Source: Octopus bimaculoides
Lineage: Eukaryota
DNA: 40,579 bases
Assembly: GCF_001194135.2 (NCBI RefSeq)
Contig: NC_068985.1
Location: forward strand, 14,932,628-14,973,206
Reading direction: 5' to 3'
The notes under the pieces were generated by a model, which saw nothing but the letters and a program-made list of their open reading frames with translations, did no database searches and was not told the DNA's origin. The position numbers were made by a program, and so were the translations under genes. Shown in pieces: positions 14,401-17,400 of the stretch. Each line of letters opens with the position of its first letter. The stretch's first letter is position 1.

Positions 14401-17400
14401 TCAGTTGCACAAGATCTCCTTAATTGTGTCGAGAACGATGAAAACTTTTTGATAATTTCGCGTTGGCACCTGAGGAAGTATCACCAAGCTTTCGGCAAAA
14501 TTTGATGCAAATTCTCTGCTCAACTTTCTCAGTCATTGTCAATGCATTCTAGTTTCGGGTATTGTAAATGATGCAGAAGACTTTCCAACGCATTACAAGT
14601 ACACCACCTACTTTCCGGACTCTGGTGGTCCAGAAACTCTTATAATCGGCACTAATTTATGAACAGGAACTTCAAATTCCCACGGCCACACTAGTTTACC
14701 TGTACCGTGCACAAACTAGTATCTTACACATTACAGTATTAATAAACTTATATCATTTATACTAATGTACTGGTACCTGTATTTCATTTAAATATTCAAA
14801 TAAATTTAATATTTGCTTAATTTAGAGTGTATTAAGCAACGCGCCCACTCTAGTTCGGGAAAATCAATGATCCAGAATGGCTTCGGAAGCAAAGGTTCCG
14901 GAAAGTCGATCTTGCACCTGGATATATTGTAGCTGCGCTTTTGTTGGTTAACGATATCTGGGTAGTACTTACCTGTCTCGACGTCTCACGTTTGCCGTTT
15001 CCATACCTGAAACAGAAAGAGACAAACATGATAAGAAATCATTGACAAAGTTAGGAAATATGTGAAATAAATATCCATAAGAGGCATTTTACAACTTCTC
15101 AATCGTTATCGCTAACTCTTTATAAACAATAGTTGTAACAACAACAACACAGTAGTAGTAGTAGTAGTAGTAGTAGTAGTAGTAGTAGTAGTAGTAGTAG
15201 TAGTAGTAGTAGTAGTAGTTGTTGTTGTTGTTGTTATTAAGGTGGCGAACAGTCAGAATCGTTAGTACGCCGGACAAAATGCTGAGCGACATTTCGTCCG
15301 TCTTTACGTTTTGAGTAAAATTCCGCGGAGATCCATTTAGCTTTTTTGGAGATAGATTTAGCTTTTTTATCTTTTCAGGATCGATAAAATAGATACCAAT
15401 CAAGTACTGGAGTCAATGTAATTGAACAGTACCTCGGATCTATGTGGTTTTCGTTACTATTTACAATTATCTTTGAAAAAAAAAAATTCTTAATGTATCA
15501 TATAGATGTAATTTTTGACGCAGAATTCGAATTTGTTATTCATTTATTCTAGAAAAATTTTGCTAAAATGTTGCTGGTGTTAAAAGTTTGATAGTTTTCA
15601 GAATTTTCAGCCAATCAGAAAACAGCACGTTCGCTGCCTCTTCCATCATCGAGGGGCGGGAGGGTGTGCATCGGCGTGTCAAAACATTAAACTAGGATTT
15701 TATAAAATAAATTATCTTTCTCGTATCTCCCCCTCCTCCTTGTGCGCATGCGCAGCAACTTTGGTTACTATGGAAACAGTTCTTCGCAATCAGCTTTACA
15801 ATACGTGGTGCTTCTTTGCTTAGGTTACTGTGGAAATAGAAATTTTCGCCACGGTAGTATGTAAAATACGTACTTTTGATTGGCTAAAATACCCAAATTT
15901 TGAAAATTTTTAAAGGCTAATAACATTTTAATTATAGATTTAGAGGGAAAATGAATTTCATTTTCATAATTAGTATACAAAACCTAATCCATATACCAAA
16001 TTTGAAAACAATTGGAACAGAATTGTAAACAGTGAGGAAAACCACTAAGATCCAGCCCCTCTCTTCAAAATTGCAGGCTTTGTGCCTATGATAGAAAGGA
16101 TCATCATCATCATCATCATCATCATCATCATCATCATCATCATCATCATCATCATCATCATCATCATCATCATCATCATCATCATCATCATCATCATCAN
16201 NNNNNNNNNNNNNNNNNNNNNNNNNNNNNNNNNNNNNNNNNNNNNNNNNNNNNNNNNNNNNNNNNNNNNNNNNNNNNNNNNNNNNNNNNNNNNNNNNNNN
16301 NNNNNNNNNNNNNNNNNNNNNNNNNNNNNNNNNNNNNNNNNNNNNNNNNNNNNNNNNNNNNNNNNNNNNNNNNNNNNNNNNNNNNNNNNNNNNNNNNNNN
16401 NNNNNNNNNNNNNNNNNNNNNNNNNNNNNNNNNNNNNNNNNNNNNNNNNNNNNNNNNNNNNNNNNNNNNNNNNNNNNNNNNNNNNNNNNNNNNNNNNNNN
16501 NNNNNNNNNNNNNNNNNNNNNNNNNNNNNNNNNNNNNNNNNNNNNNNNNNNNNNNNNNNNNNNNNNNNNNNNNNNNNNNNNNNNNNNNNNNNNNNNNNNN
16601 NNNNNNNNNNNNNNNNNNNNNNNNNNNNNNNNNNNNNNNNNNATAGGTTATGAGAGGTAATGGTGTCAAGAAGACCCAAAGGTGTCAGGTAATGCTGAGT
16701 AAGTGCTATGGACAGACTATAGTTAAGCTCCAGGTTCGGTGATTATGCGAATGAGGAGTCCAACGTAGGTCATATATCAGCATGTGTATATATATATATA
16801 TATAAATTTTCAGAATGAGATAAAAATCCAAGGCTGTGAAAGATTTCAGAACATTTATAAAGAGAAAGTCTTACAGCTGTTTCCGGGATATTTTATATAT
16901 CCCTTCATCGGAGAGTGAAGTGGAGGAATGAAAGCAGACGTGAGATATGCAGGGATATTGTATCTGCAGTTCCGTTATTTAATCAGAATGGTAAACATAT
17001 AAGTTTCCTGTACCTTGTGTGTAAGTTCCAAAGTATTTAAAATTGGTCATTCCACGCATAGAGTTTGTAAACCGTGTTATTGGATCGAGGGTCTTTTCGA
17101 AGTGACTTAAAAGTTGGGAATGTATTTGTATATATATATTCTTTTCTTTTTATATTCTTTTACTTGTTTCAGTCATTTGACTGCGGCTATGCTGGAGCAT
17201 CCCCTTAAAGGATTTTAGTAAAACGAATCAACCCTAGGACTTGTTCTTTTAAGCCTAGTATTTATTCTATCGATATTTATTGCAGAACGGCTAATTTACG
17301 AGAACATAAACACACCAAGATCGGTTGTCAAGCGATGTGGGGCGGGGGGGGGGTACAACCACAGGCACAAACACACACACATAAATATGTACATACACAT

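What the first reader, a model, noticed from the sequence alone, without database searches (positions are those of the whole stretch)
15436..16053. MITE carrying RFX X-boxes, NRF1, CCAAT and GC boxes inside the RFX gene itself
Seen: a 618-bp element with 33-bp TIRs and an 8-bp near-TSD interrupts a SINE. Within 270 bp it holds a perfect X-box (GTTACTATGGAAAC), a degenerate X-box about 60 bp later, TGCGCATGCGCA, GGGGCGGG and an inverted pair of CCAAT boxes. Known: RFX proteins bind X-boxes, these motif classes mark TATA-less promoters, and GG termini with 8-bp TSDs fit Merlin/IS1016. Inference: a mobile promoter-like cassette that could spread RFX-responsive sites genome-wide and, at this locus, allow autoregulation or an internal promoter ~430 bp upstream of the 34-nt exon, giving a product without the DBD.
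Basis: partly seen in the sequence, partly recalled or inferred. Interest (0 to 1): 0.7.

Follow-up and report, generated by a model that had tools for sequence, protein, structure and literature searches.

The report
Old octopus MITE with promoter-like core
The 618-bp element is a real, old, non-coding DNA transposon sitting in an intron of an octopus RFX4-like gene; its CCAAT boxes are a conserved feature of a large octopus transposon group, but its RFX-type X-box was seen in no related copy and nothing shows that it regulates the gene.

Summary
Window 15436-16053 is a transposon insertion. It has 38-nt terminal inverted repeats (82% complementary) and an 8-bp target-site duplication (6/8 identical), proven by comparison with intact copies of the SINE it split. 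It lies in an intron of a minus-strand RFX4-like gene, 429 bp upstream of a real 34-nt exon. All the listed motifs are present, and each is rare in shuffles (P 0.0001-0.004).

New anatomy. The inverted repeat extends, in degenerate form, over arms of about 185 nt, and each arm ends in one of the CCAAT boxes. The two X-boxes sit in a roughly 60-bp tandem duplication.

In about 130 kb of fetched Octopus DNA I found an abundant related MITE family, which I call B. One copy is in this window, at 22008-22661. Family B shares GGATCT termini, perfect 8-bp duplications and a CCAAT motif 163-181 nt from the end. So the CCAAT boxes are a superfamily feature and the Merlin-like assignment is reasonable.

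None of the 5 complete family B elements scanned carries an X-box, an NRF1 site or a GC box. The only other relative of this element is one decayed arm, without the core. No autonomous partner was found.

Spread of RFX sites, autoregulation and an internal promoter remain untested. This is a moderately interesting, mostly ordinary intronic MITE.

The parts
15428..15435 (.). Left copy of the 8-bp target-site duplication (AGTACCTC)
   Evidence: the SINE consensus ...GACTAG[C/T]CCCTCC... is present once in intact SINE copies and on both sides of the element here.
15436..16053 (+). The whole 618-bp non-autonomous element ('family A'). It has a foldback-type architecture and no coding capacity.
   Evidence: No Pfam hit in any frame. 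No Rfam hit. Single-strand DNA fold z = -4.1. nhmmer self-match to its own reverse complement over positions 1-618, E 1e-8.
15436..15473 (+). Left terminal inverted repeat; it starts GGATCTAT
   Evidence: I1 (38 nt, 82%).
16016..16053 (-). Right terminal inverted repeat; its reverse complement starts GGATCTTA
   Evidence: I1.
15436..15620 (+). Left arm: a degenerate long inverted repeat, AT-rich (25% GC), ending in the CCAAT motif
   Evidence: the arm interiors align with local score 27, against 11.6 +/- 1.7 in shuffles. Composition.
15874..16053 (-). Right arm, the inverted partner of the left arm, ending in the CCAAT motif
15609..15617 (+). CCAAT box AGCCAATCA. The CCAAT starts 176 nt from the left terminus.
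   Evidence: The motif is position-conserved in related family B arms.
15877..15885 (-). CCAAT box AGCCAATCA on the minus strand. The CCAAT starts 171 nt from the right terminus.
15621..15873 (.). Unique core, 44% GC, carrying the GC box, the NRF1-type palindrome and the X-boxes
   Evidence: No homologue in any related element or fetched locus.
15653..15660 (+). GC box GGGGCGGG
15743..15754 (.). NRF1-type palindrome TGCGCATGCGCA, lying within 4 nt of the element's centre of symmetry
   Evidence: Centre computed from I1 and I2.
15764..15777 (.). X-box GTTACTATGGAAAC, a full match to GTHNYYATRRNAAC
   Evidence: the only site in the window, where about 0.25 sites are expected.
15824..15837 (.). 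Degenerate X-box GTTACTGTGGAAAT, with two departures from the consensus
   Evidence: D2.
15759..15878 (+). Two units of about 60 bp, a decayed tandem duplication, each starting with an X-box-like 21-mer
   Evidence: the 21-mers match 18/21. The rest of the unit is weakly similar (P about 0.03).
16054..16061 (.). Right copy of the target-site duplication (AGCCCCTC)
15220..15435 (+). 5' part of the interrupted SINE. Its 3' part is 16054-16100.
   Evidence: at least 12 copies of this SINE in the window. The joined flanks align across the junction with intact copies.
14974..15007 (-). 34-nt exon of the RFX4-like gene, 429 bp downstream (gene sense) of the element
19658..19723 (-). Second exon of the RFX DNA-binding domain (upstream of the element in gene sense)
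23146..23271 (-). First exon of the RFX DNA-binding domain
22008..22661 (+). A second, younger MITE in the same gene ('family B'). It has GGATCT termini, a perfect 8-bp TSD CATTATTG, CCAAT plus CRE at the inner end of its arms, and (TTAGGG)n in its core.

Best explanation
The feature is an old, non-autonomous, foldback-type DNA transposon (a MITE) of a Merlin-like group that is common in Octopus genomes. It inserted into a SINE in an intron of the RFX4-like gene and duplicated 8 bp of target.

Its two CCAAT boxes are not a local promoter invention. They are the inner ends of the two arms of about 185 nt, and they belong to a motif (ATTT.A[AG]CCAATC) that the whole group keeps at 163-181 nt from each terminus. 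I infer that this motif serves the transposon itself. Most likely it is an inward-facing NF-Y-type promoter element inherited from autonomous parents, as MuDR carries promoters in its TIRs. A binding site for transposase or a host factor is the alternative.

The 253-bp core (GC box, NRF1 palindrome, tandemly duplicated X-box) is specific to this lineage or to this copy. It is either that lineage's own housekeeping/germline-type promoter remnant or a captured piece of host promoter.

At this locus the element is most likely a neutral intronic passenger, and the presence of an RFX site inside an RFX gene is a coincidence.

Shown: the insertion, the TSD, the arms, the motifs, and the group-wide CCAAT conservation. 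Inferred: the Merlin parentage, the promoter function, and neutrality at this locus.
For: - Insertion and TSD.
- Long degenerate arms ending in CCAAT; DNA fold z = -4.1.
- Related family B: at least 11 loci in about 70 kb of O. bimaculoides and O. sinensis DNA, plus one in the window. Perfect 8-bp TSDs TAACGTTG, GGCAATTC, GGATGCCC and CATTATTG, with GGATCT...AGATCC termini. CCAAT is kept in 11 of 13 arms, even where the neighbouring sequence differs between subfamilies.
- The family B arm profile hits both arms of this element, weakly (E 2.3 and 4.4), with the left-arm match shown to be in the expected register.
- A 70%-identical arm of this element's own lineage, with CCAAC at the homologous place, lies at L008 12190-12376 (O. 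sinensis). It has an orthologue in O. vulgaris at L011.
- Merlin definition: terminal GG, 8-9 bp TSD, TIR 24-462 bp. Merlin is abundant in O. bimaculoides (PMC8101967).
- Age: 7/38 TIR mismatches and 2/8 TSD mismatches give roughly 0.09-0.12 substitutions per site. That matches the wave of TIR-element expansion at about 25 My (JC 0.09) reported for Octopus (PMC13282606).
- The core motifs are non-random but absent from all 5 complete related elements scanned.
Against: - Only one full copy of this exact family was seen, so repetitiveness of the core is unproven.
- No autonomous Merlin with matching TIRs was found next to the five distinct Merlin genes examined in seven fetched loci.
- Similarity between the arms of this element and family B is statistically weak outside the terminal GGATCT and the CCAAT motif, so convergence cannot be excluded.
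- If the copy has decayed by about 10%, survival of five intact motifs (about 50 specified bases) is somewhat unexpected under neutrality. That leaves room for constraint at this locus.
- No data on transcription, chromatin or protein binding were available.
Confidence: 0.6

Rival explanations
1. The element is a mobile promoter cassette whose family carries the X-box, NRF1, GC and CCAAT module in its consensus. It has seeded RFX-responsive sites across the genome. In this intron it acts as an RFX-dependent enhancer or internal promoter of the RFX4-like gene, giving autoregulation or a product without the DBD.
For: - The motif cluster is real and each motif is rare by chance.
- The X-box-like 21-mers are much better kept (18/21) than the rest of the duplicated 60-bp unit.
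- CCAAT is a conserved group feature.
- The element lies 429 bp upstream, in gene sense, of an exon downstream of the DBD, and the next exon (about 13377) begins with an in-frame ATG.
- From memory: vertebrate RFX genes have alternative promoters, and RFX1 regulates its own gene.
Against: - None of the 5 complete related elements scanned has an X-box (even allowing one mismatch), an NRF1 site or a GC box.
- No other copy of the core was found in about 130 kb of Octopus DNA or in the protein-space search.
- The one other arm of this lineage has no such core beside it.
- No expression or chromatin evidence was available.
- A transcript entering the 34-nt exon needs the correct frame, and an as yet unseen exon lies between DBD exon 2 and this exon.
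Confidence: 0.12
2. The core (15621-15873) is a captured fragment of a host gene's bidirectional, TATA-less promoter, picked up between the arms of a family B-like MITE. It would be unique to this copy or to a small lineage.
For: - The core has a different composition from the arms (44% against 25% GC).
- It is unrelated to the (TTAGGG)n-containing, largely palindromic cores of family B.
- It is not itself palindromic, although it sits in a foldback element.
- Its motif set is typical of housekeeping promoters.
Against: No donor locus could be searched for, because no octopus genome database was available. No exon-like ORF or Pfam hit lies in the core. Sequence capture by Merlin-type MITEs is not documented, to my knowledge.
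Confidence: 0.2
3. The element belongs to a superfamily other than Merlin, for example a Mutator-like element (long TIRs, 8-11 bp TSD), or hAT or P (8-bp TSD).
For: Arms of about 185 nt recall MULE TIRs, and MuDR TIRs carry promoters (from memory). No Merlin gene examined is flanked by matching termini.
Against: - The termini are GG..., not the CA/TA-type ends of hAT or P (from memory).
- The TSD is exactly 8 bp in all four clean family B cases.
- Merlin is abundant in Octopus.
- Family B arms lie close to two Merlin genes in the bracketing orientation, at L006 4504-4602 and L009 9367-9500. This is not significant, because family B is dense.
Confidence: 0.12
4. The X-box-like 21-mers are internal copies of the TIR's transposase-binding motif (TIR TTTCGTTACTAT against box TTTGGTTACTAT), not RFX sites.
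For: D4: an 11/12 match between the left TIR and X-box 1. TIR-L and box 1 both read ACTAT; TIR-R and box 2 both read ACTGT.
Against: The best local alignment of either TIR to the core is no better than in shuffles (P 0.33 and 0.86).
Confidence: 0.04

Closest known systems
Merlin-superfamily MITEs (Feschotte 2004; survey in PMC8101967)
   Same: Terminal 5'-GG, an 8-bp TSD, TIRs within the 24-462 bp range, no coding capacity, and a host genus rich in Merlin transposase genes.
   Different: No autonomous partner with the same termini was identified. The arms of about 185 nt, with a position-fixed CCAAT motif and a foldback architecture, are not part of the published description.
Octopus 'family B' MITEs found here (window 22008-22661; L006 5575-6284; L007 2977-3378, 12303-12929, 16077-16672)
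   Same: GGATCT termini, 8-bp TSD, size of about 400-710 bp, long inverted arms, and ATTT.A[AG]CCAATC at 163-181 nt from each end.
   Different: The arms are otherwise too diverged to align significantly. The family B core carries CRE (TGACGTC), CAGCTG and (TTAGGG)n. The element studied here carries a GC box, an NRF1 palindrome and X-boxes instead.
MITEs that amplify transcription-factor binding motifs in plants (Morata et al. 2018, PMC5950925)
   Same: Short non-autonomous TIR elements that carry bona fide TF motifs, which transposition could distribute near or inside genes.
   Different: In the plant cases the motif is shown to be in the family consensus and amplified in many copies. Here that holds only for CCAAT (and CRE in family B), not for the X-box.
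MuDR/Mutator TIR-embedded promoters (from memory)
   Same: Long TIRs that contain inward-reading promoter elements in both ends.
   Different: Different superfamily, with a 9-bp TSD. Promoter activity here is only inferred from motifs.
Ciliary-gene X-box promoters bound by DAF-19/RFX (C. elegans consensus GTHNYYATRRNAAC, from memory)
   Same: One site matches the 14-bp consensus completely.
   Different: It lies in a transposon in an intron, not within about 250 bp upstream of a ciliary gene's start codon. Binding was not tested.

Membership tests
MITE (non-autonomous TIR DNA transposon) | Terminal inverted repeats | tested here: met
   38 nt, 82% complementary; degenerate arms extend to about 185 nt.
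MITE (non-autonomous TIR DNA transposon) | Target-site duplication flanking the element, with an empty site demonstrable | tested here: met
   AGTACCTC / AGCCCCTC. Intact SINE copies carry the 8-mer once.
MITE (non-autonomous TIR DNA transposon) | Small size and no transposase coding capacity | tested here: met
   618 bp. The longest stop-to-stop frame is 79 aa. No Pfam family at E<0.01. No tblastn match to Merlin transposases.
MITE (non-autonomous TIR DNA transposon) | Multiple copies in the genome | tested here: inconclusive
   One full copy in the window. One decayed arm in O. sinensis, with its orthologue in O. vulgaris. The related family B is abundant. No genome-wide search was possible.
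Merlin superfamily | Conserved terminal 5'-GG | tested here: met
   Both ends read GGATCT. Definition from PMC8101967.
Merlin superfamily | 8- or 9-bp TSD | tested here: met
   8 bp here. Perfect 8-bp TSDs in four related family B copies.
Merlin superfamily | TIR length 24-462 bp | tested here: met
   38 nt strict, about 185 nt degenerate.
Merlin superfamily | Cognate autonomous element with the same termini, encoding a DDE_Tnp_IS1595 transposase | tested here: inconclusive
   Five distinct Octopus Merlin genes were fetched with flanks, in seven loci (L005-L011). None is bracketed by matching termini. Octopus has many more Merlin copies that could not be reached.
hAT / P superfamilies (other 8-bp TSD transposons) | Characteristic termini (hAT YARNG; P CATG...), recalled from memory | tested here: not met
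   The termini read GGATCT on both ends.
RFX-bound X-box | Match to the 14-bp imperfect palindrome GTHNYYATRRNAAC | tested here: met
   15764-15777, the only match in 40 kb. The second site departs at two positions.
RFX-bound X-box | Binding by an RFX DNA-binding domain, or RFX-dependent expression | not testable with these tools
   Needs EMSA, ChIP or a reporter assay.
TATA-less (NF-Y / Sp1 / NRF1) promoter | Cluster of CCAAT, GC-box and NRF1 motifs | tested here: met
TATA-less (NF-Y / Sp1 / NRF1) promoter | Transcription initiation and open chromatin at the site | not testable with these tools
   No CAGE, RNA-seq or ATAC data were accessible. CpG o/e is 0.92 across the whole window, so CpG content carries no information.
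TF-motif-amplifying MITE family | The motif is present in the family consensus and in many copies | tested here: inconclusive
   Met for CCAAT (11 of 13 family B arms, both arms here, and a degenerate site in the L008 arm). Not met in the available sample for the X-box, NRF1 site and GC box (0 of 5 complete related elements scanned). Copies of this exact family could not be collected.

The most novel reading that the evidence does not exclude
An abundant Octopus Merlin-like MITE superfamily carries position-fixed, inward-facing NF-Y (CCAAT) modules in both arms, with CRE in family B. One lineage has replaced the core with a GC-box / NRF1 / double X-box module. Together these elements would have seeded very many promoter- or enhancer-like sites through cephalopod genomes. 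The copy in the RFX4-like intron would then act as an RFX-responsive internal promoter or enhancer, closing an autoregulatory loop or producing an isoform without the DBD.
Probability: 0.1. Interest if true: 0.7.

Novelty: new member of a known kind. Interest (0 to 1): 0.35.

Why it matters
If the motifs work, this would be an animal counterpart of the plant MITEs that spread transcription-factor sites. It would occur in a lineage (octopus) whose genome expansion and neural gene regulation are often ascribed to transposons. It would also put an RFX site inside a neural RFX gene.

What is actually shown is more modest but still useful. An abundant octopus MITE group keeps a CCAAT-box motif, often with a CRE, at a fixed position in both arms. 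Thousands of potential NF-Y/CREB sites may therefore be transposon-borne in these genomes. Motif-based promoter or enhancer calls in cephalopod introns need to be masked for these elements first.

Tried and rejected
1. Six-frame pseudo-protein of the element against 5.8 billion proteins, to find spurious ORF calls in other copies. No hit.
2. Exact-pattern scan of JGI metagenome contigs with the TIR consensus. Four chance hits only, with nothing beyond the 23-mer.
3. Rfam, at gathering and at permissive thresholds. Nothing relevant.
4. Idea that the X-boxes are internal copies of the TIR. The similarity is not above shuffles, so I rejected it.
5. Idea that CpG retention marks an unmethylated promoter. 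The whole window has CpG o/e 0.92, so this carries no information.
6. Search for the autonomous parent. I took Merlin protein sequences from the supplement of PMC8101967, ran a profile search and fetched seven Octopus loci covering five distinct Merlin genes. No gene is flanked by GGATCTAT... termini, and the Merlin genes of L006 and L007 share no DNA similarity that would delimit an element.
7. Orthologous RFX4 intron. The RFX search listed no cephalopod protein. A representative search with the 13.3-kb exon led to a 272-kb ENA contig (L012), but that species is too distant. Only exons align and no element is present.
8. Attempt to obtain many more octopus loci through high-copy TE proteins. 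The SETMAR-like ORFs are single-copy in the collection.
9. Search for the exon that must lie between DBD exon 2 and the 34-nt exon. Not found; it may lie in an assembly gap.
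Full report
**What the window is.** The window is eukaryotic, with many SINEs, microsatellites and assembly gaps. On the minus strand it carries exons of an RFX gene. Two exons encode the RFX DNA-binding domain (23146-23271 and 19658-19723), and exons of the BCD_RFX domain lie at about 11.3 kb and 5.4 kb (Pfam; coordinates). The best protein matches are RFX4. The source is an Octopus genome, on two grounds. The window's SINE matches O. bimaculoides DNA. By eye, the end of a MITE arm at 22565-22661 differs at only 4 of 98 positions from a copy on an O. 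bimaculoides contig.

**Checking the observation.** The inverted repeat is real: 15436-15473 against 16016-16053, 38 nt, 82% complementary. The element occurs once in the window. Its flanks are the two halves of one SINE that has at least 12 copies in the window. Aligned with intact copies, the SINE's single AG[C/T]CCCTC appears on both sides of the element, as AGTACCTC and AGCCCCTC. This is direct evidence for a transposition event with an 8-bp duplication that has since acquired two substitutions.

All the reported motifs are in place. In dinucleotide-preserving shuffles of the 295-bp core they are individually rare: X-box 0.001, GCGCATGCGC 0.0001, GGGGCGGG 0.004, two CCAAT boxes 0.0009.

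The 34-nt exon is real (15007-14974, with a good acceptor and donor). It encodes [11 protein letters not shown], which resembles the ETGKKEVSKQ stretch of human RFX4 as I recall it from memory. It lies 429 bp from the element.

- Beyond the 38-nt TIRs, the left and right parts of the element still align as an inverted repeat (local score 27, against 11.6 +/- 1.7 in shuffles). The element matches its own reverse complement over its full length in nhmmer and folds better than shuffles as single-stranded DNA (z = -4.1).
- The element therefore consists of two AT-rich arms of about 185 nt (25% GC) around a unique 253-bp core (44% GC).
- Each arm ends, on its inner side, in one of the CCAAT boxes. 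The 'inverted pair of CCAAT boxes' is thus a consequence of arm symmetry, not an independent feature.
- The two X-box-like sites head two units of about 60 bp that are weakly similar along their whole length (P about 0.03), while the 21-mers themselves match 18/21. This is an old tandem duplication.
- No frame encodes anything recognisable, and no RNA family matches.

**Relatives.** Direct routes to other copies failed. I therefore took Octopus Merlin transposase sequences from the supplement of PMC8101967, ran a profile search and fetched seven Octopus loci around Merlin genes.

These loci, and the window itself, contain an abundant MITE family that I call B. There are at least 11 loci in about 70 kb, plus window 22008-22661, which lies in the intron between the two DBD exons. 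Family B elements have:
- GGATCT...AGATCC termini;
- perfect 8-bp TSDs (TAACGTTG, GGCAATTC, GGATGCCC, CATTATTG);
- arms of about 180 nt, with a largely palindromic core in the copies I read;
- the motif AATTT[CT]AACCAATC at the inner end of the arms, 163-181 nt from the terminus, kept in 11 of 13 arms even where the adjacent sequence differs between subfamilies.

In several subfamilies a CRE (TGACGTC) and CAGCTG follow this motif, and the core holds (TTAGGG)n.

The element under study shares the GGATCT terminus, the 8-bp TSD, the arm length and the CCAAT motif at positions 176 and 171. The family B arm profile finds both of its arms, but only at E about 2-4; the left-arm match is shown to be in the expected register. 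I read this as distant common ancestry within one superfamily, though convergence is not excluded.

One further relative of the element's own lineage exists. It is a 70%-identical arm in O. sinensis (L008 12190-12376), with its orthologue in O. vulgaris (L011). It has CCAAC at the homologous position and no recognisable core next to it.

- For CCAAT the answer is yes, at superfamily level. That argues the motif is functional for the transposon.
- For the X-box, the NRF1 palindrome and the GC box, the available sample says no. None of the 5 complete related elements scanned has them, even allowing one mismatch in the X-box, and no second copy of the core was seen anywhere.
- The sample is small (about 130 kb) and biased towards Merlin loci. 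The honest status is that spread of RFX sites is unsupported, not refuted.
- The idea that the X-boxes are internal TIR copies was tested and rejected.

**Classification.** Published Merlin features are a terminal GG, an 8-9 bp TSD and TIRs of 24-462 bp. All three are met here. Merlin is unusually abundant in O. bimaculoides. The decisive feature, an autonomous copy with the same termini that encodes a DDE_Tnp_IS1595 transposase, was not found next to the five distinct Merlin genes examined. Family B arms lie near two of those genes in the bracketing orientation (L006 4504-4602; L009 9367-9500), but family B is so dense that this is not significant. I therefore call the element Merlin-like, with a Mutator-like alternative kept open.

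**Age.** There are 7/38 mismatches between the TIRs and 2/8 between the TSD copies. This gives roughly 0.09-0.12 substitutions per site, assuming the ends were identical at insertion, as they nearly are in young family B copies. That matches the wave of TIR-element expansion at about 25 My (JC 0.09) reported for Octopus (PMC13282606). It exceeds the roughly 5% per-lineage divergence between O. bimaculoides and O. sinensis seen in L005/L008. The orthologous intron of O. sinensis and O. vulgaris should therefore contain the element, which makes a clean conservation test possible. I could not reach that locus. The only RFX4 locus obtained (L012) is from a distant cephalopod in which only exons align.

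**Mechanism.** Shown: a cut-and-paste-type insertion with an 8-bp duplication, foldback arms, and a superfamily-conserved CCAAT motif facing inwards from both arms.

Inferred:
- The CCAAT motif (with CRE in family B) is an arm-embedded promoter element inherited from autonomous parents. This is analogous to the TIR promoters of MuDR (from memory).
- The core of this element is either its lineage's version of such a promoter, of housekeeping or germline type (Sp1, NRF1, RFX), or a captured host promoter fragment.
- At this locus the element is a neutral intronic passenger.

The X-box is of good quality. It fully matches the C. elegans consensus and, from memory, is one base from the osm-5 site. 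RFX binding in vitro would therefore not surprise me.

**Verdict.** The interesting part of the interpretation (RFX-site dispersal, autoregulation, an isoform without the DBD) has no support yet. The most useful new result is the position-fixed CCAAT/CRE module in an abundant octopus MITE group.

Noticed in passing
window 22008-22661: A second, younger MITE ('family B') in the same RFX4-like gene, in the intron between the two DBD exons. It has a perfect 8-bp TSD CATTATTG, GGATCT termini, CCAAT+CRE (CAACCAATCACTGACGTC) in the left arm with a mutated partner in the right arm, and interstitial telomere-like (TTAGGG)n in the core (TRF row 22356-22389).
   Followed up: yes
L007 12931-14058 (O. sinensis): About 11 tandem copies of a 103-bp unit derived from the terminal part of a family B arm, directly abutting a complete family B element. 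A MITE end has expanded into a small satellite.
   Followed up: partly
L005 10001-10891, L008 10001-10891, L011 10001-12836: A 296-aa Merlin-derived ORF that is intact and syntenic in O. bimaculoides, O. sinensis and O. vulgaris (88% aa identity between O. bimaculoides and O. sinensis, no gaps). It has no recognisable TIRs around it. It may be a domesticated transposase or simply a slowly decaying old copy.
   Followed up: partly
L007 8346-8570: A short element with CCCTTT...AAAGGG ends and TTAA on both sides (a piggyBac-type MITE), inserted into the right arm of a family B copy.
   Followed up: no
window 15008-19657 (minus strand): The reading frame requires an exon between DBD exon 2 (which ends ...GQSKY) and the 34-nt exon, because direct joining gives a stop codon. 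No such exon was found. It may lie in one of the assembly gaps (16200-16642, 17744-17915, 19040-19092).
   Followed up: partly
window 13931-14505: A frameshifted mariner-like transposase remnant (HTH_48 of Mos1-type transposases) in the intron just downstream of the 34-nt exon.
   Followed up: no
window 17339-17346 and 17425-17432: Two further GGGGCGGG boxes in inverted orientation, flanking a CA-rich microsatellite inside another repeat. 0.07 such boxes are expected per window and 3 are observed. They are not part of the element.
   Followed up: no
window 15151-15219 and 16100-16199: Perfect trinucleotide arrays, (AGT)23 and (ATC)33+, flank the SINE that hosts the element. The second array runs into an assembly gap.
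   Followed up: no
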